The position numbers were made by a program, and so were the translations under genes. From Basidiobolus meristosporus CBS 931.73 (taxonomy: Eukaryota > Fungi > Basidiobolomycota), in assembly GCA_002104905.1 (NCBI GenBank), contig MCFE01000651.1:1-49625 (forward strand): a stretch of DNA of 49,625 nucleotides, in the 5' to 3' direction. Shown piece by piece: positions 2,401 through 49,625 of the stretch. Every line of letters begins with the position of its first letter. Within the stretch, counting starts at the first letter, position 1. Below the pieces are notes generated by a model. The model worked only from the letters and a program-made list of their open reading frames with translations, made no database searches and was not told the origin of the DNA.

Positions 2401-2411
2401 AGCTTGTACTT

Positions 2412-5684: not shown

Positions 5685-5695
5685 AGCTTGTACTT

Positions 5696-19826: not shown

Positions 19827-20063
19827 GCATCACTCTTCCCAACGTCTACATTCTCATTGTCTACTGCTAGCTTTATACTATAAAGCACTTGGTTGAAATT
19901 AAATGCTGATTACTATTTCGTGTATGCACTGGCTCACATTTTTTGAGAAGTAGCAAACGGCGAGGCACCCAGGTTAAATTAATCTAGCTCGCATAAAGCT
20001 AATTGTGTGGGATCGAGAAGGTGATATAAATCGGGAGAGACCGCATGACTTCACCAGTCAGTC

Positions 20064-20510
20064 ATGCAGCCTTTCTTCCTCTTACTAGTTTCCGCCATCG
20101 CTTCACTGCAAGCAATCTCCGCTACCCCACTTGGTGGCTCCCAGGTAGCCTTCACCAGTGAGCCATGCGTCGAACAACTGGGTACTTGTTATCAGGACAC
20201 TTAGGCCCCCAGTCAAGAACACCAGCCGTCAACAGAGGAGGTGGATGATTCGGAGATGAGTGGGCCAAAGCAAACGAGCCAGACTTCGGGTTGCAAGGGT
20301 TTGACATTTCAAATTTACAACCATCCCAAGCCTTACTGGACAACATCAATGGTCATTCTGCCAGTAAAGCCAATGCCTTGTCCAACTCAAATCAGTTCGA
20401 TCAGGCGCAAGTCATTGATCAAACCCTCTACAAATTATCATCACTCAGCCAGCAGTAGAGGTGGGTACAAGAAGTATAAGAGATCTGCTCGTCGCCACTT
20501 CAAAGATACT
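20064..20510 (+). pseudogene. Family A pseudogene
   Basis: Collinear with 7832-8362; frameshifts, an in-frame TAG and deletions. Confidence 0.85.
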
Positions 20511-20723
20511 CCAGAAAATCATGGTGAGTTCCACAAAATACTGGAAGAAAATTGAAAAAATAACGAGTGAAGGGAATGCAAAATACCGATGGTACTCAAA
20601 AAGTATAATAATTGTGTGAGTAATGACCTGATTAATCCATGAAATATATAACCCTAAGCAATTTTCCCAGCTAACCCATATTGTATGCTATACAACAGCC
20701 CACAAATACGTTATTCGCTCCAC

Positions 20724-21193
20724 ATGCGCTTTATTACTGTAGGCCTTGCCGCGAATCAAGTTGCCGTTGCTGTTCTTCTTCATGCACTCGCGAGTATAGA
20801 AGGGTTCATTATCGCAGTTTACCATGTGTACAGTATGCGACCGATTACCACCAAAACGTTCGAGTTTTGCCTGTTTTTAAGACACCCAATGTCCGATCCC
20901 CGTTATTGCGTCAGGTTTTCACCATCGTGACCAGAAAGCAAGATAGCCTGAGCATTGCTAATGCCAACAGCAATAAGGGCTTCAATGTCAAGTATCAAGC
21001 AGGGCCCAGCCTTAAACTGGAGGGTCGGGGCAACGCATTAGTATATGCCAAGCAAAAGGACTATAGTTCTTTCTCTCCCTACGTTCTGATGCAGCCCACC
21101 CAAGATGTACAGTACACAACCCCAGTAACAGAGACACAATGTGTGAAAGAACAAAATATTCAATACACTCATTGTGCTGACAATTGCGCCTAA
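20724..21193 (+). pseudogene. Family B, frameshifted after the signal peptide
   Basis: Signal peptide and mature region are in different frames; ends CADNCA*. Confidence 0.8.
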
Positions 21194-32364: not shown

Positions 32365-32889
32365 ATGCAGCTTTCCTTCCTCTTGCTAGTTTCCGCCATC
32401 GCTTCGTTGCAAGCAATTTCCGCTACCCCACTCGGTGAATCCCAGGTGGGCTACACCAATGAGCCATGTGTCGAACAACAGGGTGCTTGTTATCAGGACA
32501 CATCGGCCCCCGGTCAAGAATACCAGCCATCAACTGAGGAGGGGGATGATTCGGAGATGAGTGAGCCAATGCAGACAAGCGAGACTTCGGGTGAGCAAAC
32601 AGAATTCTCTGGGTTGCAAGGGTTTGATATTTCAAATTTACAACCATCACAAGCCTTGTTGGGCAACATCAATGGCCATTCCTCCAGTAAAGCCAATGCC
32701 CTGTCCAACTCAAACCAGTTCGACCAAGCGCAAGTCATCGACCAAACCCTCTACCAGCCCAAGCAGCAACAGCCACAAATTATCATCACTCAGCCAGCAG
32801 CGCGTGCGCTTAGAGGTGGGTACAAGAAGTATAAGAGATCTGCTCGTCGCCACTTCAAAGTTAGATATTTCAGTGGAAACAGACATTAA
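32365..32889 (+). CDS. Family A secreted protein, copy 3
   Basis: Intact ORF, near-identical to 7832-8362. Confidence 0.82.
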   Translation: MQLSFLLLVSAIASLQAISATPLGESQVGYTNEPCVEQQGACYQDTSAPGQEYQPSTEEGDDSEMSEPMQTSETSGEQTEFSGLQGFDISNLQPSQALLGNINGHSSSKANALSNSNQFDQAQVIDQTLYQPKQQQPQIIITQPAARALRGGYKKYKRSARRHFKVRYFSGNRH

Positions 32890-33065
32890 GTCTAGTGAAA
32901 GTAAATTTACGAAATAAAATGAGCAACATATTACTCGGTATACTGATGATGTACAGTACTCAAGAATTTGCTGATATGCACACACGGAAACAGTGGCATT
33001 TATCGTTGTACACAATGACATTGTGAGTATTGAAGAGAAGTATGGGCAGCGGTGATAGAGCCATG

Positions 33066-33087
33066 TATATATATATATATATATATA
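33066..33087. repeat. (TA)11 microsatellite
   Basis: Direct reading. Confidence 0.9.
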
Positions 33088-33258
33088 CAGAGGCTGTCAT
33101 TCCAGTGCATGTGTTTTATATGTTACAGGCTTCCTCAATAAAGTCTATAACAGAATGTAACAAGACTCACTTTATGCCCTCGACTTAACCTTATTATATA
33201 GCCTCCCATGCTATATAGCGGCCTATGCAACTAACTCATTTCTCAGCTATTCTTCAGC

Positions 33259-33756
33259 ATGCGCTCTACTACCGTAGCAGTGATTCTAGGCCTTGCCGCT
33301 CTTCAAGTTGCCGTTGCTGCCCCAATCGGCTGTTCTTCTCCATGCACTCGCGAGTATAGAAGGGTGCATTATCGCAGCTTACCATGTGCACAGTATGCGA
33401 GTGATTGCTACCAAAACGCTCGAGTTTTGCCTGTCGTTAAGACGACGAATGTCCAATCCCCGTTATTGCGCCAGGTTTTCACCACGGTGACCAGAAAGCA
33501 CGATAACCTGAACATTGCTAACGCCAACAGCAACAAAGGCTTCGATGTCAAGTATCAAGCAGGGCCCAGTCTCGAACTGGAGGGTGGGGCCAACGCATTA
33601 GAATACGCCAAGCAAAAGGGAGCGGAACACTCGGAAGATAGTTCTTTCTCTCCCTACGTTCTGATGCAGCCCACTCAAGATGTACAATACACAACCCCTG
33701 TGGCAGAGATGCAATGCGTAGAAGATTGTCCAGAGCAAAACGTTCAATACAATTAG
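33259..33756 (+). CDS. Family B secreted protein
   Basis: Signal peptide, APIGCSSPC+R/Y-rich N-terminus, core PLLRQVFTTVTRKHDNL..YQAGPSLE; stops slightly earlier than its paralogs. Confidence 0.8.
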   Translation: MRSTTVAVILGLAALQVAVAAPIGCSSPCTREYRRVHYRSLPCAQYASDCYQNARVLPVVKTTNVQSPLLRQVFTTVTRKHDNLNIANANSNKGFDVKYQAGPSLELEGGANALEYAKQKGAEHSEDSSFSPYVLMQPTQDVQYTTPVAEMQCVEDCPEQNVQYN

Positions 33757-34128
33757 TGTGATGACATGAGCTGAAGATGTAGGTAGTCATCACCACGCTA
33801 CAACTGAAAATTTTCAATCAATAAAATTCAAATGACATTCTTACACTTGTTGTTGCTTGTGATTAGCTTTTTACTTGCACACACCTGTATCATGATCAGA
33901 GCTGCGGGCATTAATATTAGATTTTCGCTTACGTACTAACATACTCACCCTCAGTCTTTAGTAATGCTGCCCTCCACCGAAAAGGTTGATATTAGAGAGA
34001 ATATCTGGCAGGGTTACCGGATTGACTTTGGTAACACAAAGATTCGAGATTGACAGACTACCCAGCAACTGTTAGCATTGTGATATTTCCTCTTATAATT
34101 TTTGTGCAAGCTATAGGAATAACAAAAG

Positions 34129-34210
34129 TGATGAGGGTGGGGTTCGAACCCACGCCTCCGAAGAGACTGCGACCTGAACGCAGCGCCTTAGACCACTCGG
34201 CCACCTCACC
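34129..34210 (-). tRNA. tRNA-Leu(CAG): tRNA-Leu(CAG), intact
   Basis: Acceptor GGTGAGG/CCTCATC, anticodon stem CTGCG/CGCAG with loop TTCAGGT, long variable arm, GGTTCGAACCC, then a T4 terminator. Confidence 0.95.
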
Positions 34211-34524
34211 AGCTTGTACTTGGTCCTTACGAAAGAGTTTGAAAGGAAATATTCTTGAAGTACTACCATCACTCGAAGCAAGCATCATAAAGTATCTTTA
34301 CCTACTGTTTTGTCGTTACCCATCAGTGTTTTTTCATAATGAAGAAATGGCAATCGAATTTACGATCAATAAATACAAAATCCCGGGTTTGGCAGACTAA
34401 ATTAAACTGAAAATCAGTGGAAGTACGTAGATCTTTTCCTATGTAAATCATTTGTAAACGGAGCAATTGTCTAGATGATACTGAGTAAGAATATACAAAG
34501 GTAGCATATAAGTATCATTCGGTC

Positions 34525-34830
34525 ACTCTTACTAAGTGGGATCGCGAAGGTGATATAAATCGGGAGTACAAGAAGTTACGCCACTTTAAAGTATGCTCCA
34601 GAAAATCATGGTGAGTCCCACAAAACAATGGAAGAAATGAGTAAAAATAAGAACTATGGACATGTGTGAGGGGAATGCAGAATGCTGACAATCGTTAGAA
34701 GTGTGCCTGCAGGAACGCAACAGTAGCAGAGACAGAACAAAACGTTCAATACAGTTAGTGTGCTGACAAGATAAATAAAGTTGAACTGAGAATAACCATT
34801 CTTTGCACAGTCTCACAGACTATTGATCCA
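34525..34830 (+). pseudogene. Collapsed A-B cassette relic (A promoter fused to A 3' end and B 3' flank)
   Basis: GGGATC..AAGGTGATATAAATCGGG followed directly by TACAAGAAGT..CCACTT..CCAGAAAATCATGGTGAG, then B-downstream CAGTCTCACAGACTAT. Confidence 0.6.
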
Positions 34831-36199
34831 TCCTCATTAAAATCAATTTCCATAACTGAATGTTCAAGTGGGCACACAACTTTGCATAAAAATTGGAAAA
34901 TAGTAAGTTGGTAGTCAAACTTTATTGTAGTGACTACTGTTGACCATCCACTCAGACTGCCAATACCCACTATCCTTGTGTCACTTGTATTCTCCAACTA
35001 TAACAGAGAGGTTGTGCTTTTTAGGAACCAGATGAGAAATATGGTACCCAATGTGCATCAACATTCAAAACTTAGCCAACTTTGCTATGTTAGAAATTCT
35101 AGTACCCTGACTGATTTTCCCTAACTCAGACATAACTAATCCCAGTTATAGTTTACTTTATCCCACCTCACAATCTATTTTTAGCTGTCATACCTAATCA
35201 ATTTGCATGTGGAATTACATTATCAACTTATCTGCCAAGCCTTCCCAGGTGATTAGTCCTCTTAGATTCATTCAACCACTTGGCAGTTACTAAGATATCA
35301 ACTGATTGATGATGCAAACACTTTCCTGTGGAAGTGCTTGATGAAGGACAGCAAGACGCCTGCTGAATACTGTGTAAAAGTCTTCTTAACCATACAGCTT
35401 TCAGTATTTGAAGTAACAGCTACTTAGTGAATATGTAGATGTATCATACTAAGGGACATGTGTTAAATTAGGTCTCATACCAACTTGGGTAGCAACTAGA
35501 TTTCTGTACCCTGTATTCAAAGCATATGAAGAATCAATGCAATATACTGGCTGAATCCAGCTAATTGCCAGCTGAATGCCAGCTGAATATCATCAAGTAA
35601 AAGTAAAAAATCCAAGTATGAAACATTTCATCAGGAGGTTCATTGGGAAATTTGCCATTGATCATAACAGTTATAACCTACTTTCTTTCAATAACTTGGT
35701 CAAATCAATCCAAATAGTGCTGCGTGCCACTTGACAAAGTAAGCCTGTATATTTTTATTGCTGCCAGCCATTCTTGTTGTCTTAGTAATATGGTACCCTC
35801 AGAGACCTGCAACAACTACTTGCATATAGCTACAGATTTTGGCATTGCATTCAGCAACTAAACTTGTGTTTGCAATTGCAACTACTTGATAAGCCAGTAT
35901 TGCCAAAAGTTCTTTCAATCCTATAAACTCAAAGGCGTATCTTGAACTTGGCAGGAAAGCATTAATGAGTTCTGAAAACATTGAATGTTACTTTGCTAAT
36001 AGTGTGGAACATAGTAAAGTGATGTATGTGACTACATATGTTTGTGTTAGGTCCTGGACATAAATTGGGTTGGCAATACAGAAAACATAAGTTGGCACAT
36101 TTGGTCCAATTGGATTAGCACTGTTGTGCAAGCAAGACATACACTACTAAAATGCACATAGCACCCTATGAAAAACTTCAAATTTTGATATTTTACTTT

Positions 36200-39100
36200 T
36201 ACTACATGGTGTTTGGGTGGTATTCTACTGGCATTTAGCTGGGATCCAGTCAGTGAACTTCATTAAATTTTTCAAGTGCATTTAACTCTGGAAACAACAG
36301 TCTAGTTGCCACCAAAGTTGGTATGAGTGCTAAAGTGGCACAAGTCCCTCTGTTTGGTATATCCACAGGCTGTCAAAGTTGCTGTAACATCAAATTCTCA
36401 GAGAGAACCTCAACAAGTCCTGATCTCCTATGGTATCTGACTGGCATCCTGTGGTGCATCCACTGTCCTCTAAATTTTGTCCCCAATCAATATCAGGGTG
36501 TCATAAAAGATCCTGTATTAAGCTCTTACAAGTGTACCTTAAGTGTCTCAGCAGATCCTTTTAGTTATCTAATTCAGCATAAGTGCCACAACAACATTAG
36601 ATATATAGTTCTGATTGAGCGGGCACACAATTGCCACTGAATATACAATATCTGGGTATGTTCCAATCAGATATACATCAGACTTCTAGCCATACATTGG
36701 TAAGTGAATACTGGGCTTTCAGATGGCACCAAGCCCTGTTGATTTGGTAGAATGTTGACCAAGATAAGATGTATCTCCGCTATAATAGCTGCTGATTCAC
36801 AGTTTTCTTTTGGTACTTCTTAAGTATTTCTTGAATGTACTTGAACTGGCTGAGAATAATAGTCTGGGTTCCTCTGACTTTGGAGTATGTTTTCCTTACA
36901 AATTAACTGAGCTCTCCTAGATTGGACATTCTGAACTCCTTAAATTGGATGAATTTATTCCCCCCTGATTTTTCTTGCTTATTAGTGGCTATAATAAGAT
37001 TAGACATATATAGAGCTAGTAAAACTGGAATCTCACTATCTATTGTACAGTAGATACTATGGTCAGAATCACTACTCTGAATACTAAAAGATTATAAACA
37101 GGGATCTATCTTGCAATTTGAAGCTCTTGGTGATTATAAGAGACCATATTGAGATTTTTTAAGTTTGCAGATCTGATAAGGGTTATCTTGGTCAAAGAAC
37201 TCATCAGGCTGGTTCATGTTTACTTCCTTATGATGTTTATCACTCAAAAATGCTGCTTATACATCTATTTGACACATTTACAACTTTGACTTGGCTTCAG
37301 TAGGCAATATCAATCAGATGGAATTAAAATTGACTACTAGTCAAAGATATCAGTGTGGCCCAGTCCAATTGATTGAGAGTACCCTTTTGTCACAGGCCTT
37401 GCTTTGTATCCTTCAGTTGTACCATCAGCCTTCATTTGTCTTGAAGACCCATCTGCATACAGTTGATTTTTAGTTGATTGATAATTAAACACTGCCCCAT
37501 GATTAATTATTTGTTGGGACCAGATATTCCTCAGTCATTGCAGATCTTCAAAACCTTCTCTGAGGGCTATTGCAGGCCTCCTTTACAGTCTGGGGCCCAT
37601 CACTATATACTGAAGAGGCATAGGCCAAGTCTGGACCCTTATTGATTTAGTAATTTGGGCTATATGTAATCCAGCTGAATATCCTGCCTTGTGAAACTCT
37701 AAAGATCACCTCTGGGATATTTCTGAGCACTGGTTTGGACTGAAATCAAGTTGAAGAGTCCTCTGGAGTGAAAAGATTCCCATTGCTTTGCTCCAATTCA
37801 ATTGCAACTACTGGTGGATATGAGATTGAATTTCTGTTATCATCAAATAACATCTTGTGTGAAGATATTGAGTTTTACTAGACAACACATCCCTGGATCT
37901 GCTCAGCCTTTTTGCTTTGGTATTGTGGTGAATGTACACCTTACTACCATCCAAATAACCCAAAGAATGCATTTTACACTTTTTAATGCATATTTTGGCC
38001 AATTTCCAGACAGTCTCTAAGCATATGATGAGCAGCCAACTATTCCAAAGTGCTTTACACTTGGTATGTAGCCATACCATGCCTTAGATGGAGGAGAATC
38101 ACAAGGTATGACACTATAATCCCAACTGTTAAGACATACAGCTGTGGCAAGTGATTTCTCTCAGATATCTTAGGATAATAGCTGATCTCAGATCTTGCCG
38201 TATAGGTTATTTATCTGTGGGAATGTTCTGACACTGCATTTTACTGTGTGAAGTATTGTACAGTAGTCTCTTGCTTCATCCCATGAACTTTGCACAAGTG
38301 GATGAGCAGTTCTGAAATATATTTTCTGCCAATGCCAGAGTGTACTTTCCTAATTTTCCAGAAATCATAGGATAATTTTTGATCATGGATCATAAATCTT
38401 GCCATATCAATTATTGATCTGTTAGCACATTCTGCTACTCCATTTTGCTGTGGGGAGTATGGTACAGTAGTCTCTTGCTTTATCCCATAAATCTTGCAGA
38501 AGTGGACAAAGAGTTTTGAGGTATATTCTCCACCACAGTCAGAGCGTATTTTATTGCTTTTTTCACCAGTTTCTCTCTCCACCATGGCTTTAAGCTCCCT
38601 GAACTTAGACAGAGCTTCTTACTTTACTTCCATGCAAGAGACCCACACATATCTTGCATAATCATAACAAATGTGATTAAATATTTCATTCTGCCAAATA
38701 TTATATTTGCATAGGTCAATGCATATCAGAGCATATTAGATCCAATGTTTTATTAGTTTTGACTGACCCATGACTCTCCAATGGTTATCTGGCCTGTTTC
38801 CCCTATATGACAGCCTCATAATGCTCCTAACTGGCTGGGGGTAATCTGATCTTTGATTGTGTTGCACAAATAATCATAGCAATGTCTCCAAATGTCCTGT
38901 ACCAAAGCTTTGGTGTTTCTTCATTTAAGTAACTTACATCAACTTGCAGATACAATGAAATATGAGTCAGCATATATGGAGTCCGGCTTCTAATACCCAG
39001 AGCAATGTGGGCAACTCTTGTTTGCATGCATATTTAGTGCAGATATGAATAGTCTACTGGTGGCTGATAATGCCTTCCAGGCATTCTTTGTAATTTTGCT

Positions 39101-39366
39101 GTTGCGCAATAGACTAGCAATTTGTCTTTATTGTTGTGCAAATGCAGTCAACAGCACTTTGTTCTTTCTCCTGGCACTTTAAGGCTTATGCTCCTACAGT
39201 TTTAGGAGGGCATTCTTTTCCCATAACAATGTCCCAAAGGCCTCTTTCCTGTAGCAGCATATTCATCTTCACCATCCAGACTTGATGTGAGATCCAGAAT
39301 GGCATTCCTTTCACCAGAATCACCATTGCAGTACTACTGTCACCACCAATACCAGCTTCTCTACAT
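36200..39366 (-). mobile_element. Highly decayed Ty1/copia sequence (probably two copies)
   Basis: Gag WMVKMNMLLQERGLWDIV (~39.25 kb); integrase IRSDCGGEY..PYSPQQNGVAE; RT MNQPDEF..ICKLKKSQYGL (~37.15 kb); GTxPDI-like RT/RNase H motif appears twice (~37.63 and ~36.66 kb). Many stops; ends not resolved. Confidence 0.8.
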
Positions 39367-39758
39367 ATAGATTATGTAAGTACCAAAATGATTTCCACTT
39401 TGTCAACCACTTATGCCTGCCTTGCTGTTAAAGCACCATTATGGTTCCCTTATTGCAACTCCATACATTTATCTACAAAGATAGTAGTTACCCTCAAATA
39501 TGTGCAGTTAATAGACTATACAGTTTATCAACATCTTGAAAGGTACCCAACATACATACTTGGGGATAACCCTTACCCTCTTATATATATTCACTACTAC
39601 ATAGGTTGGCTGATAAGCTGTGAAGCACAATCCGTCTGTAATGATGATGATGAAGTAGAACATAAATACGTATATACCTCATTTGTCACTAAAAGCCTGA
39701 GGATGGGATGAGTATTTTATTATTGACAGAGTAGGAATCTTGGTTTTGCATATATACA

Positions 39759-40089
39759 TTAATATCTGCGGAGGCGTCGTTCACAACAAATACACGATGG
39801 TTGATCATAATCGCCCTCATCTGGGATAGGTGGCTGAATGTATGTAGGCGTAGATGGTTGGAACAACGTCTGATCTACTAGCTGCACTTGGGAGTATTGA
39901 TTTGAGTTGGAGAGAGCTTGGGCATCTTGCGCAGAGTTAGCCTGGATGCTGTCCAGCAACGGTGAGGCATCTGGGACATCCGATGGGTAGTCTGTCGATG
40001 AATATGATTCAAGGTATGGTGTCTGGTTGTTGTATGTATCGATGGGCCAAGAATACTATGGTGGATAGAATGTAGGTATTGTGGTGCAT
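39759..40089 (-). pseudogene. Family C pseudogene
   Basis: Homologous to 42924-43295; deletion frameshift after the signal peptide. Confidence 0.8.
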
Positions 40090-40558
40090 ATTGGTGCTTA
40101 GTGATACTCAACGATTACCTTTATCCATACTTTTATACATGATAGTCATGATTGATCAACGATTGTCAGCTACCCAAGCACAGTTTACTAAATTATCTAG
40201 CCAAAGTTAATCATCATTTTATTCAGAACAACGAAATGAAGAGGCGATTATCATTTCACATACATTTCACATTCAATAGTGAAATCACTGATCATCGACC
40301 AACTTAGCCAATCATTGGTTTGCATGACGAAAAATAAATAAACATCAATTGACCAATTGGCATCCAAGATTGGCATTCATAAGTATTGTTCTTATGTAGC
40401 CTAATATCTAGCTTTGTCAATATTACGGGATAAAATCTATGGATATTTGAGCCATTGGTCAATACTTTGCTGAGCTAGATATAGGATTTAGCATAACAAA
40501 TTATGCCAACTACTGTTATAAAATGAGCTTGTGAATAGTGCTACACTGCTCATCAAGA

Positions 40559-41122
40559 ATGCAACTCACTATCGCTTTATTGGCCTTCTACATTGCCTCC
40601 ATCCAGGCAATCCCTGTTGCAATAGATGAAGCTTCTCAGGTCAGCTACGGTAACAATTCGTGTGGGGAGCAAGTAAGCCCCTGTTACCAAGAAGCTCAAT
40701 CCCCCGGATACGACTATCAACCAGAACAGGATGACGGTGGCGAGGATGATTTTGATATGACTGAGGGCGAAGGCGAAGGCGGAGACTCAATGGAAGACAC
40801 TACCACCCAGCCAGAGTTATCGTATAGTGCTGAGTCGGGTATTCCTGACTTCAATATAGCTGATATACAGCCACGACAGGCCTTGTTGGACAAAGTAAAT
40901 ACTCACTCCTCCAATAAGGCTGATGCACTATCAAAATCCAATCAGTTTGACCAGGCCCAGGTCATCGACCAAACCCTTTATCAACCCAAACAGCAACAAC
41001 CTCAAATTATCATCACTCAGCCAGCGCCTCGTAGCTATGGTGGCAGCAGAAAGAAGTACAAGAGGTCAGCCCACAAGGATTTTAAGATCAGATATTTCAG
41101 TGGGAACAGATACTTGGATTAA
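40559..41122 (+). CDS. Family A secreted protein, diverged copy
   Basis: TATA ~40517, signal peptide, acidic middle, ALSKSNQFDQAQVIDQTLYQP, basic tail RYFSGNRYLD. Confidence 0.82.
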   Translation: MQLTIALLAFYIASIQAIPVAIDEASQVSYGNNSCGEQVSPCYQEAQSPGYDYQPEQDDGGEDDFDMTEGEGEGGDSMEDTTTQPELSYSAESGIPDFNIADIQPRQALLDKVNTHSSNKADALSKSNQFDQAQVIDQTLYQPKQQQPQIIITQPAPRSYGGSRKKYKRSAHKDFKIRYFSGNRYLD

Positions 41123-42024
41123 TATTACGAATAAATATCCCATTTGAAGTCATTGAAACATCAGCAGCCTTAGTGTGCAAACTGCTATACCACAGGTATT
41201 AACAATGGTTGCTACTTGCCTTGTTCCGAAACCGCAACTTTAATTGGGTTTTTGCATATAAATTCTTGATAAGCACTATTTTTTAACTTTTTGAATTTCC
41301 AGTAAGAACGCTTCTTTTCCCCCTAATATCGCTCAAAGTAACAGTCTGCCCATCTACAGAGCCAGTAGATAAACTCAGGGAAGTGTTGGAGAGTGTCATT
41401 GAGGAAGTAAAAAGCGATATGACTCATACTACGAGTTGTCAAGCGAGCGCTCGAAGCGTGCACACAGGAATGGCACTGTTCTTACGTAGATCATTATTTC
41501 ATTGCCAGTTTGCAGAAATATCTTTCATCATAAATAATACCTTCGATTTTTTATCCCCAAAATTGTGGGTCTAATTATGAAAATTTTCCTCACTTCTTTT
41601 GTGGTAAATATAGCGCTACACCCTCTAGGCAACGGTAAGACTGTATATAGTACATTCCCAGTTGCTAGTTGAGTTATAGTGAGCAGTGACTGATCGGTCC
41701 TTCGGGATTAAAGGTTGTATTCACTTGATGAACTTGCCGGTGATTATTTCAACAGCCTGACGAGGACGGCCCGTTCATTCTGAGAGGTTGCTAATTGATA
41801 CACAGGCTAAAATAAACCATTTGATGGAAAGTATGCTTAATACAAGCAAATGAACGAAACCTCAATAAACTCCATATAGATATAGATATATAAGCACTAC
41901 CTAGCAGTTTGTTTGTAATCTATTAGTAATGTATGGGAACCATGGGTATCCAAACTATACTATATAACTTGCTGTGCTATATATTCATCAGTGTACTTCC
42001 GTGTGAACGGAACTATTCGACAAG

Positions 42025-42561
42025 ATGCGTTTTACTACAGCAGCAGTGATTTTGGCCCTCGCTTCTCTTCAACTGGCGGTTGCTGCTCCAATCGGTTGCT
42101 CTTCTCCCTGTACCAGCGAGTATAAAAGGGCTCATTATCGTAGCTCACCATGTGCACAGTATGCGGAAGGCTGCTATCAGAATGTCCAAGTTTTACCCAC
42201 CATCAAGACAACAAATATCCAAGCCCCATTGTTGCGTCAGGTGTTCACTACCGTTACCAGAAAACACGACAATCTGAGCACTGCAAATGCCAGCAGTGAT
42301 AAACGCTTCAACGTGAAGTACCAAGCAGGTCCCAGTCTCGAAGCAGAGGGCTCAGCTAGCGCATTAGAATACGCCAAGCAGAAGGAAGCCGAGCACTCGG
42401 ATGACAGTTATTCGAATCCCTATGTCTTTATGCAGCCCACCCATGATGTGCAATACTCAGAACCCATGGTTGAGACCCAATGCGTCTCAGACTGTCCTGA
42501 GCAAAATGAACAATTTCCAGAGCCTATGGAGAATACCGAATGTGCTGATAATTGCGCTTGA
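42025..42561 (+). CDS. Family B secreted protein
   Basis: Intact 178-aa ORF with signal peptide; ends CADNCA. Confidence 0.85.
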   Translation: MRFTTAAVILALASLQLAVAAPIGCSSPCTSEYKRAHYRSSPCAQYAEGCYQNVQVLPTIKTTNIQAPLLRQVFTTVTRKHDNLSTANASSDKRFNVKYQAGPSLEAEGSASALEYAKQKEAEHSDDSYSNPYVFMQPTHDVQYSEPMVETQCVSDCPEQNEQFPEPMENTECADNCA

Positions 42562-42923
42562 AGTAGCCTAATAAAGCTTACATACTCTTTCTTTCAACCA
42601 TGAAGAAATAGGGAATTTACTAGAAACAGTATGAATAGTATGATGCCAAGTGAGCAATACACCAATTAATGGGCATATATACCCGGGCTTAACTCTCACC
42701 CTCCCATAAATATTCACCTCATATGATGGCTGATAAGCAGGGAGGCATAATCCGTCTGTAATGATGGTGATGGAGTAGAACATAGATACATACATTTATG
42801 CCTCTTTTCTCACTAAAAGCCTGCGGAAGGGATGAATATTTACACAATGCATATCTCTCCATGTACTCTGGTTTCCCTATTTTATTGTTAACAGCGTAGG
42901 AATCTCAGTGCTCCATGTTTACA

Positions 42924-43295
42924 TTAATATCTGTAGCGGCGTCGTTCACAACGACTACACGATGGTTGATCATAATCATCACTTTCGTATTTGTCTTCGT
43001 CCTCATCTGGGATCGGTGATTGCACATATGTAGGCGTAGATGGTTGGAATAACGTCTGATCCACCAACTGCACCTGGTCATATTGATTTGAGTTGGAGAG
43101 AGCTTGGGCATCCTGCGCAGAGTTAGCCTGGATGCTGTCCAGCAACGGAGAGACATCTGGGAAATCCGATGGGTAGTCTGTCGATGAATATGATTCAAGG
43201 TATGGTGTCTGGTTGTTATATGTATCGATGGGAGATGCATAGGATGCACCGGCCAAGAATACTAAGGTGGATAGAATGTAGGTATTGTAATGCAT
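42924..43295 (-). CDS. Family C secreted acidic protein with CSRC-RRRYRY tail
   Basis: Signal peptide MHYNTYILSTLVFLAGASYA; core ALSNSNQYDQVQLVDQTLFQP. Confidence 0.8.
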   Translation of the reverse strand: MHYNTYILSTLVFLAGASYASPIDTYNNQTPYLESYSSTDYPSDFPDVSPLLDSIQANSAQDAQALSNSNQYDQVQLVDQTLFQPSTPTYVQSPIPDEDEDKYESDDYDQPSCSRCERRRYRY

Positions 43296-44062
43296 TTTGG
43301 TGCTTAGCGATACTCGACAATTACTTTTATCCATACTTTTATACCTGATATACATGATAGGCATGATTCATCAATGATCATCAGCTACCCAAGCACAGCT
43401 TACTAAATTATTTAGCCAAAGTTAATCATCATTCTATTCAGAACAACTAAATGATGAGTTGATTATCATCTCACATTCATATCACAATCAATAGTGAAAT
43501 CAATGGTGTTAATCAGTGACCAAGTTAGCCTACCATTGGGTTGCATGACGAAAAATATATAAATATTAATTGACCAATCGGCATTCAACATTGGCATTCA
43601 ATATCAGGTTTGTACTAGCAAATATCGAACCTCAAGTCTTCAACTAGGCGAGACCACTCGTGATAACTACGATTGTTTATTTATCGTATTTACGAACCAA
43701 GTATTGTTCTTACATAGATTACATGATATCTAGCTTTGTTAATATTACGGAATAAAATCTATGGATATATGAGCCTTGCTTTCCTGAGTTAGGTAATTAT
43801 CAAGTGATAGCGAGAATGCTACTTGTTGTTGCTTGGCTGGTTTTATGCGTTCCTACTATCCAAGTGACTCCTGGTTACGTTGAGATCATTTGAACGGATA
43901 TCAATAGCGTTCTTATTACCTATCCTTCATCTATCACAGCTATCTATTAAAATGTGAATACATCAACGTAGTTATGCTCATCAATATCCAAGCCTTGATA
44001 TATAGTCAAACGCACTATATATGAAAGATTGTATGAGGCAAAATACTCATTCGTCCTTCAAG

Positions 44063-44617
44063 ATGCGTGCAACTACTATTATGATGATTTTGGCCCTTGT
44101 GTCTCTTCAGACCACCATCGCAGCCCCAGTCCCATGCTCTTCATGTTCCCGCAAGTATAGAAGAGTCCGTCAACGTAGCTCACGATGCTCTGACCAAGAA
44201 AGCAACTGCCACTCGAGTAACCAAGTTCAACCGATTGTTGAAGTGCCAAATGTCCAAGCCCCATTATTGCGACAGGTGTTCACTACCGTTACAAGGAAAA
44301 ATGACAATCTCAACACTGCTAATGCGAATAGTGACAAGAGCCTTAATGTGAACTATCAGGCTGGCCCCAGCCTTGAGGCAGAAGGTGAAGCAATTGCCAC
44401 TGAGTTTGCTAAACAGAAGGGGGACTCTTCCTCTGCAGATGATTCATCATATCCCGTGGTTGTGGTTCAGCCCTCGCAAGACGTTCAGTATGCAACACCA
44501 GTAGTGGATACTCAATGTATTGAAGGTTGCTCAGGCCAGGATGTACAGTACATGGAACCCCTGGCAGATGCATCATGTGGTGACAATTGTGCTGATCAGT
44601 TAACTGAGCCTATGTAA
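44063..44617 (+). CDS. Family B secreted protein, diverged paralog
   Basis: Signal peptide MRATTIMMILALVSLQTTIA; same core motifs. Confidence 0.82.
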   Translation: MRATTIMMILALVSLQTTIAAPVPCSSCSRKYRRVRQRSSRCSDQESNCHSSNQVQPIVEVPNVQAPLLRQVFTTVTRKNDNLNTANANSDKSLNVNYQAGPSLEAEGEAIATEFAKQKGDSSSADDSSYPVVVVQPSQDVQYATPVVDTQCIEGCSGQDVQYMEPLADASCGDNCADQLTEPM

Positions 44618-45517
44618 GACACTCTGTAGTTGATCAATAAACCTCATTGATTCATATATAAGCGATCAGAAGTAGGCACGTTACCTCTGTACTGTAACTG
44701 GAGCCTCCATTCGAGTATGTGCAATTGCCACTATGGGTGCTTCATGCTGACATGAACAACAGTGCAATTGCAACATGGTTTGTTCAATCGTAGAGTTAGT
44801 GAGGGGAGCGTACAGAACTGCGTACTAATCAACACATATACCTTAGTGTTTATAGACCAACTAATGGGGAAAGTAGCACATATGGAGATAGCCTTATTTA
44901 CTTAGAAATCAGATGCATAGAACACACCAACCAAGAATGTAGGCATTGTAGTACATCTCGATGCTTAGTGATGTTCGTTTATCCATACATCTATACATGA
45001 CTCATCGACAATCCTCGCTACCCAATACAGTTTACTAAATTATCTAGCCGAAGTTAATCATCATTTTGTTCAGAACAACTAAATGAAGAGGCGATTATCA
45101 TTTCACATGCATTTCACATTCAATAGTGAAATCGGTGGGATTGATCAGCGACCAACTTAGCCAATCATTGGGTTGCATAACGAAAGATAAATAAATATTA
45201 ATCGACCAATTGGCATTCAATATCAGGTTTGTACTTGCAAATATCGAACCTCAAGTCTTCAACTAGCCGAAACCACTCCTGATTATAAAATAAGTCTATA
45301 AGTACGATTTTTTAGACGTATTGGCGCATCAATTTATCTTATTTACGAGCCAAGTATTGTTCTTACATAGATTACATAAAATTTAGCTTTGTCAATATTA
45401 CGGGATAAAATCTATGATGTTTGAGCCATTGTCCAATACTTTGCTGAGCTAGATATAGAGTTTAGTAACTACGGTTATAAAGTGAGCTTGTGACTGGTGC
45501 TACACTGCTCATCAAGA

Positions 45518-45591
45518 ATGCAACTCGCTATCGCTTTACTGGCCTAAGTACTCTAAGATCAGATATTTCAGTGGGAACAGATACTTGGATT
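45518..45591 (+). pseudogene. Family A gene with ~480-bp internal deletion
   Basis: First codons of the 40559 gene joined to its last codons (AAGATCAGATATTTCAGTGGGAACAGATACTTGGATTAA). Confidence 0.75.
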
Positions 45592-46565
45592 AATATTACG
45601 AATAAATATCCTATTTGAAGTCACTGAAACATCAGCAGCCTTAGTGTGTGAGCTGCTATACTACAGGTATTAACAATGGTTGCTACTAGTCGTATTCTAT
45701 AATATACATGAATCGCAACTATATTTTACCCTTTATGAATTTCCACGCTCCTTTTCTCTCTTGCAAACTTGTATATGAGGCAATTCCTATGCTCTGATGT
45801 AAATATCACTCATAGTAACAGTCTGCCAATCTACAGAGCCAGTAGATAAACTCAGGGAAGTGTTGGAGAGTGTCATTGAAGAAGTAAAAAGCGATATGAC
45901 TCATACTACGAGTTGTCAAGCGAGCGCTCGAAGCGTGCACACAGGAATGGCACCGTTCTTACGTAGATCATTATTTCATTGTCAAGTTGAAGGGATATCT
46001 TTCGTTATAAATAATACCTTCATTTTTTTATCCCCAAAATTGTGGGTCTAATTGTGAAAATTTTCCTCATTTCTTCGGTTATACACATAGCGCTACACCC
46101 TCTAGGGAACGATAAGACTGTATATAGTACATTCCCAGTTACTAGTTGAGTTCTAGTGAGCAGTGACTGATCGGTCCTTCGGTACTAAAGGTTTTATGCA
46201 GTGGATGATTGATTATTTCAGCAACCTGGAGAGGACGGCCTGTTCACTCTGACAGCTTGTTTATTAATATTCGAACTAAACTAGTCCATTTGATGGAGAG
46301 TATGCTCAATGCAAACAAATGAATGTCTAAACTACTGGAGACTTATAAAACTACTATAGCTTATACAAGTGAGTATGTTATTTCACTTGCTGGATTCCTC
46401 AACGTCAATAAACTCCATATATATAGATATATAAGCACTACCTAGCAGTTTGTTTGTAATCTGTTAGTAGTGTATGGGAACCATGGGTATCCAAACTATA
46501 CTATATAACTTGCTGTGCTATATATTCATCAGTGTACTTCCGTGTGAACGGAACTATTCAACAAG

Positions 46566-47102
46566 ATGCGTTTTACTACAGCAGCAGTGATTTTGGCCCT
46601 CGCTTCTCTTCAACTGGCGGTTGCTGCTCCAATCGGCTGCTCCTCTCCTTGTACCAGTGAGCGTAAAAGGGTTAATTATCGTAGCTCACCATGTGCACAG
46701 TATGCGGAAGGTTGCCATCAGAATGTCCAAGTGTTGCCAACCATCAAGACAGTAAATGTCCAAGCCCCATTCTTACGTCAGGTGTTCACTACTGTTACCA
46801 GAAAACACGACAATCTGAACACTGCTACTGCCCGCAGTGATAAAGGCTTCAACGTGGAGTACCAAGCAGGCCCCAGTCTCGAAGCAGAGGGCTCAGCTAG
46901 CGCATTAGAATACGCCAAGCAGAAGGAAGCCGAGCACTCGGATGACAGTTATTCGAATCCCTATGTCTTTATGCAGCCCACCCATGATGTGCAATACTCA
47001 GAACCCATGGTTGAGACCCAATGCGTCTCAGACTGTCCTGAGCAAAATGAACAATATACAGAGCCCATGGAGAATACCGAGTGTGCTGATAATTGCGCTT
47101 GA
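46566..47102 (+). CDS. Family B secreted protein
   Basis: Intact; close paralog of 42025-42561. Confidence 0.85.
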   Translation: MRFTTAAVILALASLQLAVAAPIGCSSPCTSERKRVNYRSSPCAQYAEGCHQNVQVLPTIKTVNVQAPFLRQVFTTVTRKHDNLNTATARSDKGFNVEYQAGPSLEAEGSASALEYAKQKEAEHSDDSYSNPYVFMQPTHDVQYSEPMVETQCVSDCPEQNEQYTEPMENTECADNCA

Positions 47103-47447
47103 AGTAGCCTAATAAGCTTACATACTCTTTCTTTCAACCATGAAGAAATAGGGAATTTACTAGAAACAATATGAATAGTATGATGCCAAGGGAGCAATAC
47201 ACCAATTAATGGGCACATATACCCGGGCTCAAATCTCACCCTCCCATAAATATTCACCTCATATGATGGCATAATCCGTCTTTAATTATGGCGATAGAGT
47301 AGAACATAGATACATACATTTATGCCTCTTTTCTCACTAAAAGCCTGCGGAAGGGATGAATATTTACACAATGCATATCTCTCCATGTACTCTGGTTTCC
47401 CTATTTTATTGTTAACAGCGCAGGAATCTCAGTGCTCCATGTTTACA

Positions 47448-47828
47448 TTAATATCTGTAGCGGCGTCGTTCACAACGACTACACGATAGTTGATCATAAT
47501 CATCACTTTCGTATTTGTCTTCGTCCTCATCTGGGATCGGTGATTGCACATATGTAGGCGTAGATGGCTGGAATAACGTCTGATCCACCAACTGCACCTG
47601 GTCATATTGATTTGAGTTGGAGAGAGCTTGGGCATCTTGCGCAGAGTTAGCCTCGATGCTGTCCAGCAACGGAGAGGCATCTGGGACATCCGATGGGTAG
47701 TCTGTCGATGAATATGATTCAGTTGAATCAAGGTATGGCGTCTGGTTGTTGTATGTATCGATGGGAGATGCATAGGATGCACCGGCCAAGAATACTAAGG
47801 TGGATAGAATGTAGGTATTGTAATGCAT
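47448..47828 (-). CDS. Family C secreted protein
   Basis: Intact; close paralog of 42924-43295. Confidence 0.8.
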   Translation of the reverse strand: MHYNTYILSTLVFLAGASYASPIDTYNNQTPYLDSTESYSSTDYPSDVPDASPLLDSIEANSAQDAQALSNSNQYDQVQLVDQTLFQPSTPTYVQSPIPDEDEDKYESDDYDQLSCSRCERRRYRY

Positions 47829-48385
47829 ATTGGTGCTTAGTGATACTCGACAATTACTTTTATCCATACTTTTATACATGATAGGCATGATTGATCAACG
47901 ATTGTCAGCTACCCAAGCACAGCTTACTAAATTATTTAGCCAAAGTTAATCATCATTTTATTCAGAACAACTAAATGAAGAGGCGATTATCATTTCACAT
48001 GCACTTCACATACATTTCACATTCAATAGTGAAACCAGTGTTGTTGATCAGCGATCAAGTCAACCAATCATTGGGTTGCATGACGAAAAATAAATAAGCA
48101 TCAATTGACCAATTGGCATTCAAGATTGGCATTCAATATTGGGTTGGTCCTAGCAAATATCGAACCTCAAGTCTTCAACTAGGCGAGACCACTCGTGATT
48201 ATAAAATCAGTCTATAAGTATGATTTACACTATACGTGTTAGCGTATTTATTTCTCGTATCCATGAGCTAAGTATTGTTTTTACATGGATTACATAATAT
48301 CTAGCTTTGTCAATATTACAGGATATATGAGCCATTAGTCGATACTTTGCTGAGTTAGATATAGGATTTACTGTTATGCAGTTCT

Positions 48386-48640
48386 AGAGTTCTAACCAGA
48401 ACAGGATGAGGGCGAAGGTGAAGGTGAAGGCAGAGACTGAATGGACGGCAATACCACTCAGCTAGAGTCACGTGTTCCTGACTTCAAGACAAAGTCAAAG
48501 CTCACTCATCCGAGTCACCCAACCAACAACGCGGATGCACCCTCTCAGTCCAATCAGTTTGACCAAACCCTCTACCAGCAAAGCAGCAACAATCCCAAAT
48601 TACCATCACTCAGCCAGAAACCGCTAGCTATGGTGGTAAC
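48386..48640 (+). pseudogene. Family A relic
   Basis: CCAGAACAGGATGA..GGCGAAGG, SNQFDQTLYQ and PQ..ITQP blocks; no 5' end. Confidence 0.7.
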
Positions 48641-48882
48641 ATAATCATATCTATGGCGTAGCACGATGGGGAGCAGGACAAGGCTGTCCAGTTTGCAAGA
48701 TAATAAGCCAGCTACGATTAGTGGACAGTAGATGAATTGGATAATGATGGAAATAAACAATAAATCATAGTAGCTGGGGAAGTTGTTGGCTGGCTGTCAC
48801 TGAACGCTCTGTATTAGCACGCAGTAGGCACATAAGAATTTATTTATGACAGAATGAAAAGGATTGATTATATTTGTTTGCA

Positions 48883-49036
48883 TTAATATCTGCGTCTACG
48901 GTTGCGTCGTTGACAACGGTTGCACGACGGTGAATCATTGTCGTCGCCTTCATCCAAAGCGACAGTTTGCACGTATGACGGCACAGATTCAGGTTAGTAC
49001 AATGTCTGATCGTATTGGTTCTGGTTAGAAAGAGCA
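48883..49036 (-). pseudogene. Diverged family C relic
   Basis: ALSNQNQYDQTLY*..PSCNRCQRRNRRRRY*; no start codon found. Confidence 0.65.
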
Positions 49037-49625
49037 CTGGTTAGGTAATAGTTAATCAGAGTGAATAAAGTTAATCACTTTCAATTAGAGTTGATTGGGA
49101 TTTGTTTATTCAATATCAAGTAAACACGACAACTATCAGTATGTTGGGCAGCGCCATTCTATCATTGGTAGTATTGTGGGTTTGATTCTATAAATGCTTG
49201 AATATACAAATCCATTGATTCATAGAAATATACATGAATTGGGTAACTATAGAGTAACTGCGAGAATGCTACTTGTTGTTATTTGACAGGTTCAATATAT
49301 TACTACCATTCAGGTGAGTCCTGGTGATATCGAGAGCGTTCTTACATCCGTCACAGCAATTGAAAGCTAATCAGCTACATCAACCATCAATATCCAAGAT
49401 ATAATACGTAGCCAAATGCACTATATATCTTCCCAAGTGTATGAAGCAAAATACTCAGTAACCCTTCAAGATGCGTCTCGGTGCTTAGTGATGTTCGTTT
49501 ATCCATACAGTTATACATGATTCATCAACGATCATCACTACCCAAAGTACAGTTTATTAAATTATCTAGCCAAAGTTAATCATCATTTTGTTTAGAACAA
49601 CTAAAAGAGTCGATTATCGTTTCAC

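What the first reader, a model, noticed from the sequence alone, without database searches (positions are those of the whole stretch)
32365..49625. Three-family secreted-protein cassette (A, B, C) co-amplified through the subtelomere
Seen: about 8 A, 8 B and 5-6 C copies or relics in 50 kb, kept together (E-A-B at 7-9 and 19-21 kb; A-B at 32-34 kb; C<-A->B->C<- twice at 40-48 kb). All are signal peptide + Q/N/S/D/E-rich body + R/K/Y-rich charged end, and I recognise no enzyme or Pfam motif. Inference: a co-regulated, co-assembling extracellular structure (spore coat, adhesive, functional amyloid or coacervate) from oppositely charged blocks.
Basis: partly seen in the sequence, partly recalled or inferred. 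Interest (0 to 1): 0.75.

Follow-up and report, generated by a model that had tools for sequence, protein, structure and literature searches.

The report
Basidiobolus-only secreted disordered protein gene cassette
Near one chromosome end of the frog-gut fungus Basidiobolus meristosporus, neighbouring genes for small exported, apparently unstructured proteins known only from this genus have been copied and broken repeatedly; their conserved parts seem to work together, but their job is untested.

Summary
The gene families are real, but the finding needs correction. The window is a chromosome end of Basidiobolus meristosporus.

- **Copies found:** A has 3 intact and 4 broken copies. B has 4 intact and 3 damaged. 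C has 2 intact and 2 damaged.
- **Two modules, not three families:** A and C share an almost invariant 39-residue core (hhalign E 5e-15). B has a different core.
- **B is reversed:** B has a basic Cys-rich front and an acidic Cys-containing end, not a basic end.
- **Real genes:** intact copies have signal-peptide-like starts, their own TATA boxes and dN/dS of 0.10-0.30. AlphaFold2 predicts no fold.
- **Genus-restricted:** a profile search of 1.84 billion proteins found only Basidiobolus proteins. Pfam, PDB and two metagenome scans found nothing.
- **A and B are linked beyond this window:** GenBank accessions are consecutive at 4 of 4 other loci tested. A and B subtypes diverged in parallel. 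B. ranarum gene models join a B core to an A- or C-type core in one protein.
- **Why they sit together here:** co-amplification comes from segmental and tandem duplication with heavy decay. No promoter motif is shared between families.

Co-assembly outside the cell is plausible but unshown. Cationic-peptide precursors are a close rival. Other notes of this scan describe further acidic-front, cationic-tail secreted families in this genome.

The parts
1..168 (.). Telomere repeat (CCCTAA)n. It shows that the window is a chromosome end.
   Evidence: Read directly.
1754..1939 (+). B relic covering only the 3' third of the gene. It lies next to tRNA-Leu(CAG) at 2318-2400 and is the remnant of a further A-B unit cut off at the chromosome end.
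   Evidence: tblastn. 1754-2414 matches 33565-34224 at 91.5%. tRNAs.
7085..7579 (+). E1, a 164-aa Cys-rich protein with a signal-like start and no Pfam match. It lies upstream of A in unit I.
7832..8362 (+). A1, intact (176 aa from MQLSF; an upstream in-frame ATG lies at 7811). Order of parts: signal, Cx6C, acidic block, core, basic K/R/Y/F tail.
   Evidence: Closest annotated relative is P0002, at 98% identity.
8556..8877 (+). B relic, frameshifted, with its 3' half deleted.
16219..16556 (+). A relic with several stops and frame changes.
19218..19622 (+). E2, 82.5% identical to E1 over the 143 residues that tblastn aligns. The signal-peptide region is out of frame.
20049..20508 (+). A pseudogene with an in-frame stop after the Cx6C and a frameshift through the core. 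The same shifted reading appears in annotated models P0021 and P0034-P0036.
20681..21193 (+). Damaged B. A frameshift removes the signal peptide, and one Cys of the Cx6C pair is replaced.
32365..32889 (+). A2, intact (174 aa; an upstream in-frame ATG lies at 32344). It is 94% identical to A1.
   Evidence: dN/dS against A1 is 0.13.
33259..33756 (+). B1, intact (165 aa). Order of parts: signal, basic 4-Cys block, B core, acidic end with one CxxC.
39762..40152 (-). C0, frameshifted near its 5' end.
40559..41122 (+). A3, intact (187 aa), a deep paralogue 55% identical to A1. It lies head to head with C0.
42025..42561 (+). B2, intact (178 aa, 8 Cys).
   Evidence: dN/dS against B4 is 0.30.
42924..43295 (-). 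C1, intact (123 aa from MHYNTY). Order of parts: signal, acidic Y/S/T/D-rich block, A-type core, acidic stretch, CxxC plus Arg/Tyr tail.
44063..44617 (+). B3, an intact divergent B paralogue 56% identical to B2. No A gene lies upstream of it.
44918..45001 (-). C relic, 5' end only.
45546..45593 (+). Last roughly 50 bp of a deleted A gene. It is followed by the A-B spacer, which is homologous to 41075-41854.
   Evidence: blastn self-comparison.
46566..47102 (+). B4, intact, 92% identical to B2.
47448..47828 (-). C2, intact (126 aa).
   Evidence: dN/dS against C1 is 0.27.
48435..48725 (+). A relic in which part of the core is still recognisable. The gene is degraded.

Best explanation
**What it is.** This is a Basidiobolus-restricted, modular superfamily of small secreted proteins without a predicted fold. 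It is amplified by subtelomeric segmental and tandem duplication, with birth and death of copies.

**The two conserved modules**
- Core 1 is found in A and C: ALLD-x12-ALSNSNQ(F/Y)DQxQxxDQTLYQP.
- Core 2 is found in B: PLLRQVFTTVTRKHDNLNxAxA...KYQAGPSxExEG.
- Both modules are embedded in variable charged blocks.

**Layout of each protein**
- A: signal, Cx6C, acidic block (-11 to -22), core 1, conserved basic tail (+8 to +12, ...YKKYK(R/K)xAxxxFK(I/V)RYFSGNR(H/Y)).
- B, the mirror image: signal, basic Cys block, core 2, acidic block with CxxC pairs.
- C: signal, acidic block, core 1, short CxxC plus Arg/Tyr tail.

**What is shown**
- The families and their layout in the window.
- Purifying selection on the intact copies.
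- Restriction to the genus.
- No predicted fold.
- A-B neighbourhood at other loci, and parallel divergence of A and B subtypes.

**What is inferred**
- The proteins are exported.
- Core 1 proteins and core 2 proteins act together outside the cell, most likely by binding each other or co-assembling into an extracellular material on the wall, spore or adhesive surface.
- The assembly would use short beta-prone conserved stretches (VFTTVT in B; QVIDQTLY and QIIITQ in A), complementary charged blocks and Cys pairs.
For: **Families and map:**

**Shared and separate modules**
- A and C share a core: hhalign 98.4%, E 5e-15.
- A and B share only a weak N-terminal similarity, the signal plus Cx6C-YQ (58%, E 1e-4).

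**Real genes**
- dN/dS is 0.10-0.30 in every pair of intact paralogues where dS could be estimated.
- A TATA box lies upstream of each ATG.
- The cores are the most conserved part: mean majority fraction is 0.82, against 0.53 for the acidic block.

**No fold:** pLDDT is 52 for A and 37 for B.

**Genus restriction**
- The profile search gave 28 hits in 1.84e9 representatives, all named Basidiobolus meristosporus or B. ranarum.
- JGI metagenome contigs gave nothing, and neither did PDB sequences or Pfam.

**Link between the A/C core and the B core**
- GenBank accessions are consecutive for A then B at 4 of 4 other loci tested, and for one A-C pair.
- At least eight JGI gene models run A into B.
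- A and B distances correlate over 9 pairs on contigs of the same length (Mantel r = 0.67, p = 0.0004).
- B. ranarum models P0063, P0064 and P0067 read B N-half, B core, spacer, A core, A tail.
- B. ranarum models P0070 and P0073 read B core, spacer, C-type core, CxxC/Arg tail.

**Mirror charge blocks:**
Against: - There is no expression, secretion or assembly data.
- All three families are net acidic (A -3 to -17, B -1 to -9, C -13 to -15). They cannot neutralise one another without a further polycation or metal.
- No upstream motif is shared between the families.
- Q+N content is 21 per 80 residues, below the level I recall for prion-like domains.
- Within the window most units have lost A, B or C. 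A frameshifted A allele has itself been copied to several loci. Duplication is therefore not driven by a need to keep the set complete.
- All A-B pairs descend from one ancestral pair, so neighbourhood is partly inheritance.
- The composite B. ranarum proteins are gene models.
- The shallow alignments (14-16 sequences from one genus) weaken the AlphaFold2 'no fold' result.
Confidence: 0.4

Rival explanations
1. The proteins are charge-masked peptide precursors. Each is a pro-protein whose acidic block neutralises a cationic piece, and that piece is released after export as an antimicrobial or signalling peptide.
- In A the cationic piece is the C-terminal 16-23 residues.
- In B it is the N-terminal 4-Cys block.
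- In C it is the CxxC/Arg tail.

On this reading the families are neighbours only by descent.
For: - The design of signal, anionic block and cationic block is present in all three families.
- A carries a KR or RR site 16-23 residues from the C-terminus in most members of both species.
- The A tail is nearly identical between species, FK(I/V)RYFSGNR(H/Y).
- The same subtelomere holds other small Cys-rich secreted ORFs.
- Other unchecked notes of this scan describe several further acidic-front, cationic-tail secreted families in this genome.
- The fungus lives among gut and soil bacteria (PMC9391592).
Against: - The dibasic site is not conserved in position or type. It is KR in B. meristosporus, and KK at that position with RR or KR seven residues upstream in B. 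ranarum. It is absent in P0015, P0063 and P0065.
- The most conserved part is the neutral core, which this model leaves unexplained.
- The charges do not match: the A N-block is -11 to -22 against a tail of +8 to +12.
- The model does not explain the B-core plus A/C-core composites or the parallel divergence of A and B.
Confidence: 0.3
2. These are independent lineage-specific small secreted proteins that act on hosts, vectors or competitors (effector-like). They have no mutual interaction. The cassette is a by-product of subtelomeric duplication.
For: - Lineage-specific small secreted protein families without Pfam domains are very common in zygomycete fungi, and Entomophthoromycotina have many (PMC9391592).
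- The location is subtelomeric, with rapid gain and loss of copies.
- No promoter motif is shared between families.
Against: - dN/dS of 0.10-0.30 and near-invariant cores argue against an arms-race family.
- A-B order is kept in three deeply diverged subtypes in which dS is saturated.
- Composite proteins exist in B. ranarum.
Confidence: 0.22
3. These are not real genes but chance ORFs in repeated subtelomeric DNA.
For: - Many copies are broken.
- No homologue is known outside the genus.
Against: - Synonymous change is 3 to 10 times more frequent than non-synonymous change.
- The families are conserved between two species at 36-55% identity, with invariant cores.
- TATA boxes and signal-like N-termini are present in every intact copy.
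Confidence: 0.03

Closest known systems
Lineage-specific small secreted protein (SSP) orthogroups of zygomycete fungi (PMC9391592)
   Same: - Under 300 aa, with a signal peptide and no Pfam domain.
- Restricted to a genus or family.
- Many copies.
   Different: - Here the families share defined modules: core 1 in A and C, core 2 in B.
- They are kept as ordered neighbours.
- They appear fused in a sister species.
- They evolve under purifying selection.
Subtelomeric multigene families of fungi, such as yeast FLO/EPA adhesins and PAU/DUP genes (from my own knowledge)
   Same: - Position next to a telomere.
- Segmental and tandem duplication.
- Frequent pseudogenes and unequal-crossover units.
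   Different: - No sequence relation.
- No GPI signal and no Ser/Thr repeat stalk.
- The products are short and lack any recognisable binding domain.
Anionic-propiece/cationic-peptide precursors of antimicrobial peptides, such as animal defensin and cathelicidin precursors (from my own knowledge)
   Same: One secreted chain carries a signal peptide, an acidic block and a basic block.
   Different: - No conserved cleavage site.
- The most conserved part is a neutral core, not the propiece or the peptide.
- In B the order is inverted.
- No sequence similarity: weak Pfam matches to Myticin-prepro and Evasin lie far below their cut-offs.
Ustilago maydis Rep1 repellents and hydrophobins, which are secreted surface-coating and amyloid-like proteins (from my own knowledge)
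   Same: - Small secreted fungal proteins.
- They could self-assemble on wall or spore surfaces.
   Different: - Rep1 is a chain of repeated peptides, each flanked by KR sites. Hydrophobins have a fixed 8-Cys pattern and are hydrophobic.
- A, B and C are hydrophilic and not repetitive, and match neither family in Pfam.
Oppositely charged adhesive proteins of marine animals, such as mussel foot proteins and sandcastle-worm cement (from my own knowledge)
   Same: - Disordered secreted proteins with Tyr/Lys/Arg/Gly-rich basic stretches (GGYKKYKR in A).
- Separate Ser/Asp/Glu-rich acidic stretches.
   Different: - The resemblance is one of composition only, over short stretches.
- All three Basidiobolus families are net acidic.
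- There is no evidence for DOPA, phosphoserine or glue.

Membership tests
Any Pfam family | Match at or above the curated gathering score. | tested here: not met
   A, B, C, E and F have no match, or only matches at E of 0.014 or weaker and well below the cut-offs (DUF4597, Myticin-prepro, Evasin).
CBM1 (fungal cellulose-binding module; UniRef's name for some B proteins) | Match to the CBM_1 profile, a 4-Cys module of about 36 aa with conserved aromatic residues. | tested here: not met
   The Pfam scan of B2 and B3 at E up to 1 gave no CBM_1 match. The UniRef name seen is probably a pattern match to the acidic CxxC repeats.
Hydrophobins | Eight Cys in the pattern C-CC-C-C-CC-C, and a hydrophobic mature protein. 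| tested here: not met
   A and C have 2 Cys. B has 6-8 Cys arranged as Cx3C, Cx6C and CxxC pairs. The mature parts are hydrophilic. There is no Pfam match.
Kex2-processed repeat precursors (Rep1 repellents, dikaritin-type RiPP precursors) | Several repeated core peptides, each ending in a KR site. | tested here: not met
   A, B and C contain no internal repeat of a core peptide. A has a single dibasic site that is not conserved.
Antimicrobial-peptide precursor design | A signal peptide plus an anionic block plus a cationic block. | tested here: met
   Charge maps. This is a design, not a homologous family.
Antimicrobial-peptide precursor design | A conserved processing site between the propiece and the peptide. 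| tested here: inconclusive
   KR in B. meristosporus A. KK with RR or KR upstream in B. ranarum. Absent in P0015, P0063 and P0065.
Antimicrobial-peptide precursor design | The released peptide kills or inhibits microbes. | not testable with these tools
   Needs synthetic peptide assays.
Q/N-rich prion-like domains | About 30 or more Q+N in 80 residues (criterion recalled from the literature, not checked here). | tested here: not met
   The maximum is 21 Q+N per 80 residues in A of both species.
Subtelomeric multigene family | Copies lie within tens of kb of a telomere repeat. | tested here: met
   Telomere at 1-168, with copies from 1.7 to 48.7 kb.
Subtelomeric multigene family | Paralogues at many different chromosome ends. 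| not testable with these tools
   Copies occur on more than 20 other contigs.

The most novel reading that the evidence does not exclude
Core 1 proteins (A, C) and core 2 proteins (B) form a two-component, genus-specific extracellular material. It could be a hetero-assembly, cross-beta or electrostatic, that coats or glues Basidiobolus spores or hyphae. As far as I know this lineage lacks hydrophobins, so the material would fill that role. The composite B. ranarum proteins would be the single-chain version of the same material.
Probability: 0.15. Interest if true: 0.75.

Novelty: new variant of a known kind. Interest (0 to 1): 0.45.

Why it matters
Early-diverging fungi carry thousands of small secreted proteins of unknown role. 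Two-thirds of their orthogroups have no Pfam match (PMC9391592).

This cassette offers something that can be tested. Two sharply conserved short modules are kept as neighbours, diverge in parallel and appear fused in a sister species. That makes a clear prediction: the modules bind or co-assemble.

If the prediction holds, it would define a new extracellular building block in a fungus that lives in vertebrate guts, travels on insects and occasionally infects people. If it fails, the locus is still a clean example of birth and death of an orphan gene family at a chromosome end. It also shows that several annotated Basidiobolus 'proteins' are merged or frameshifted models.

Tried and rejected
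- **Core 1 against core 2:** local hhalign gave E 0.06 and probability 0.9%. I treat them as separate modules, although a by-eye alignment looked suggestive.
- **Structure route:** both AlphaFold2 models had low confidence. I ran no fold search, because matches to such models are meaningless.
- **ESM Atlas:** no usable hit for A or B.
- **PDB sequence search:** profiles of A and B gave nothing at E up to 10.
- **JGI metagenome scans:** the A and B profiles found pattern matches but no relatives.
- **Shared promoter motif:** no k-mer of 8-12 bases is common to the upstream regions of A, B and C.
- **Cassette carried by a mobile element:** the DNA between the unit-I copies is not homologous, despite a spacing of about 12.2 kb. 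I saw no terminal repeats around the units.
- **Synteny in other contigs and in B. ranarum:** I used consecutive GenBank accessions and equal contig lengths as proxies instead.
- **Earlier findings by sequence:** nothing returned.


Full report
**Where we are.**
- The window begins with about 28 CCCTAA repeats at 1-168, so it is a chromosome end.
- Every named protein hit belongs to Basidiobolus meristosporus CBS 931.73 (K493DRAFT tags) or B. ranarum (K7432 tags).
- The window is a whole 49,625-bp contig: its own proteins are listed with that contig length.
- Earlier notes of this scan name the same organism.
- Basidiobolus is an early-diverging fungus of amphibian and reptile guts and an occasional opportunistic pathogen (PMC9391592). 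Nothing here identifies these genes as toxins or effectors. I only describe where copies are broken.

**Checking the observation.**
- tblastn of representative ORFs against the window, a blastn self-comparison and frame-by-frame reading of the damaged copies give the map in 'parts'.
- A has three intact copies (7832, 32365, 40559) and four broken ones.
- B has four intact copies (33259, 42025, 44063, 46566) and three damaged ones.
- C has two intact copies (42924, 47448; minus strand), one frameshifted copy and one relic.

Two repeat units exist.
- Unit I is (E>)A>B>, at 7.05-9.45 kb, 19.1-21.8 kb and 32.25-33.8 kb. Copies are 72-94% identical in DNA. A truncated fourth copy abuts the telomere-side elements at 1754-2414.
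- Unit II is C<A>B>, repeated four times in tandem between 39.5 and 49.6 kb, with unit lengths of about 3.2 and 4.5 kb.
- Only the 32-kb unit I copy has both A and B intact.
- Only the first unit II copy has an intact A, and its C is frameshifted.

The counts were somewhat high, however, and 'C<-A->B->C<- twice' holds only once.

**Are these genes?**
- Each intact copy begins with a hydrophobic stretch ending in small residues at -3 and -1: SLQA|I in A, AVA|AP in B, SYA|SP in C. No trained signal-peptide predictor was available.
- UniRef names two family members 'Secreted protein'.
- Each has a TATA box within about 100 bp upstream of the ATG. B genes share a double TATATA element even between paralogues whose synonymous sites are saturated.
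- Nei-Gojobori estimates for intact paralogues give dN/dS of 0.10-0.30 in all pairs where dS could be estimated.
- These are constrained coding genes, not chance ORFs, and not a fast-evolving arms-race family.

**Anatomy.** Alignments of 16 A, 14 B and 4 C proteins show a modular plan.
- A: signal, then a Cx6C loop, then a length-variable acidic block (net -11 to -22). Next comes a nearly invariant neutral core, ...LQPxQALLDxVxxHSSxxxxALSNSNQFDQAQxxDQTxYQPxQxxPQIII.... Last is a conserved basic tail (+8 to +12) ending FK(I/V)RYFSGNR(H/Y).
- C: signal, then an acidic Tyr/Ser/Thr/Asp-rich block, then the same core (PLLDxxQxxSAQDAQALSNSNQYDQVQxVDQTLFQP). An acidic stretch follows, and a short SCxRCxRR...RY tail ends the protein.
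- B is the mirror image: signal, then a basic block with Cx3C and Cx6C, then a different invariant core (PLLRQVFTTVTRKHDNLNxAxAxxxKxxxVKYQAGPSLExEG). It ends with an acidic block carrying one to three CxxC pairs.

Profile comparisons give these results.
- A and C share their core (98.4%, E 5e-15, 39 columns).
- A and B share only a weak N-terminal similarity, the signal plus Cx6C-YQ (58%, E 1e-4).
- The two cores are not significantly alike.

The 'three families' are therefore two conserved modules in three arrangements. In A, conservation is highest in the core (0.82), then the tail (0.69), and lowest in the acidic block (0.53).

**Fold and relatives.**
- AlphaFold2 with the family alignments gave mean pLDDT 52 for A and 37 for B. 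No secondary structure appeared beyond the signal helix and one short helix in B. This fits intrinsic disorder, though the alignments are shallow and come from a single genus.
- Pfam, PDB sequences and the ESM Atlas gave nothing.
- An exhaustive HMMER profile search of 1.84 billion representative proteins with the A alignment returned 28 proteins, all named B. meristosporus or B. ranarum.
- The word-based searches also returned only Basidiobolus proteins, plus one unnamed 774-bp ENA contig for C.
- Two JGI metagenome scans found no relatives.
- The superfamily is restricted to the genus as far as these collections can show.
- Cluster sizes suggest dozens of copies per genome: 22 member sequences for an A cluster, and 23 and 32 for two B clusters.

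**Is the A-B(-C) association more than inherited neighbourhood?** Inside the window it is fully explained by duplication of whole units. Four things go further.
1. At four of four other loci tested, A and B have consecutive GenBank accessions, with A first (ORX78058/59, ORX84567/68, ORX80709/10, ORX88651/52). One A-C pair is also consecutive (ORX75167/68). This assumes accessions follow gene order on a contig.
2. At least eight JGI models run A into B, for example P0005-P0007, P0020, P0025 and P0034-P0036. That again shows adjacency, and perhaps read-through transcripts.
3. Three deep subtypes of A (45-55% divergent) each sit with a matching subtype of B. Over nine pairs, A and B distances correlate (Mantel r = 0.67, permutation p = 0.0004).
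   - The pair has therefore stayed together through divergence that saturates synonymous sites.
   - The trees are not perfectly congruent. A3 is nearer the type-2 A proteins, while B2 is nearer the type-1 B proteins.
4. B. ranarum has composite gene models.
   - P0063, P0064 and P0067 lie on three different contigs. They read: signal, Cx6C, 17 residues, B core, start of the B mid-region, a Met/His/Lys-rich spacer, A pre-core and core, A tail.
   - P0070 and P0073 read: B core, spacer, C-type core, CxxC/Arg tail.
   - The spacing from Cx6C to the B core is the same 17 residues as in stand-alone B proteins.
   - The order (B then A) is opposite to the genomic A>B order, and the spacers occur in neither family.
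   - If real, these are 'Rosetta stone' fusions, which argue that the two cores work together.

**What argues against a neat co-assembly story.**
- All three families are net acidic. Their blocks complement each other: the A tail is +8 to +12 against the B end at -9 to -15, and B front plus core is +6 to +8 against the A front at -11 to -22. Even so, the mixture would need a further cation.
- No upstream k-mer is shared across families.
- Q+N content is modest.
- Decay is rampant. A frameshifted A allele has itself spread to several loci and is annotated as protein (P0021, P0034-P0036).
- Unchecked notes of this scan report several other Basidiobolus families with an acidic front and a conserved cationic tail, read as peptide precursors or glue.
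  - A fits that design and has a KR or RR site near its tail.
  - The site is not conserved in place or kind, the charges are not matched, and the precursor idea leaves the invariant neutral cores unexplained.

**Verdict on mechanism.**
- I am confident (about 0.85) in the description: a genus-restricted, modular, probably disordered secreted superfamily under purifying selection. It has been spread by subtelomeric duplication with birth and death, and its two modules are evolutionarily coupled.
- I give about 0.4 to the reading that core 1 and core 2 proteins bind or co-assemble outside the cell. Short conserved beta-prone stretches (VFTTVT; QVIDQTLY, QIIITQ), charge blocks and terminal Cys pairs are the candidate contacts. 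This is inference from sequence only.
- The other readings: about 0.3 for charge-masked peptide precursors, about 0.22 for unrelated effector-like secreted proteins linked only by descent, and about 0.03 for non-genes.

**Novelty and interest.**
- I found no paper on these proteins. They are 'hypothetical' in both annotated genomes.
- Orphan secreted families and subtelomeric amplification are both familiar. The new part is the two-module, split-or-fused architecture with mirrored charge blocks.
- I rate it a new variant of a known kind, with interest 0.45.

Noticed in passing
window 20049-20560; proteins P0021, P0034, P0035, P0036: A frameshifted A allele gives the alternative-frame peptide ...CKGLTFQIYNHPKPYWTTSM...PSTNYHHSASS. 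The same reading appears in at least four annotated B. meristosporus 'proteins'. The pseudogene was therefore copied to several loci, and those models are probably mis-annotations.
   Followed up: partly
proteins P0061, P0062, P0078 (B. meristosporus, one 50-kb contig); spacers of P0063, P0064, P0067 (B. ranarum): In some A-type proteins the acidic block is replaced by extremely Met-rich runs (MDMDMDMNM, MPMMMM). In others it is replaced by His/Lys repeats (KPKKHHTWE) and MEMPTMEKT repeats. The composition recalls Cu(I)-binding Met/His motifs, which might point to metal binding.
   Followed up: no
window 33140-33258, 41905-42024, 43943-44062, 46446-46565: All B genes carry a double TATATA element, two copies about 10 bp apart, 40-70 bp upstream of the ATG. 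It is conserved even between B paralogues with saturated synonymous divergence.
   Followed up: partly
window 1754-2414 versus 33565-34224: The 3' end of a B gene plus the adjacent tRNA-Leu(CAG) recurs at 91.5% identity right next to the telomere-side retroelement. A further A-B unit was apparently truncated at the chromosome end. tRNA-Leu(CAG) lies at 2318-2400, 5601-5685 and 34128-34210.
   Followed up: partly
window 11246-11974 and 14123-14851: There are two intact paralogous DJ-1/PfpI-family genes of 242 aa (Pfam E 1.3e-08). They lie inside a 1.3-kb duplication that is 90.6% identical.
   Followed up: no
window 27400-29191: A piggyBac-like transposase (DDE_Tnp_1_7, E 1.6e-32) is split into two overlapping ORFs. 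It is probably a frameshifted copy.
   Followed up: no
window 7085-7579, 19218-19622, 9634-10332, 15684-15881: Two more orphan secreted-looking Cys-rich families have no Pfam match. E (164 aa, 7 Cys) travels with A in unit I and is fused to A in model P0008. F (232 aa, 8 Cys) has a weak paralogous fragment at 15.7 kb.
   Followed up: no
proteins P0037, P0045, P0052, P0018, P0006, P0062: UniRef gives some of these proteins the domain names 'CBM1', 'SCP' and 'C3H1-type'. My Pfam scan of the window's B genes found no CBM_1 match. I did not scan the proteins that carry the other two names. All three names look like spurious pattern hits.
   Followed up: partly
window 7785, 20017, 32318: Unit I copies are spaced 12,232 and 12,301 bp apart, although the DNA between them is unrelated (only short matches). 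This could be coincidence, or the trace of an old 12-kb tandem duplication whose interior has been replaced.
   Followed up: partly
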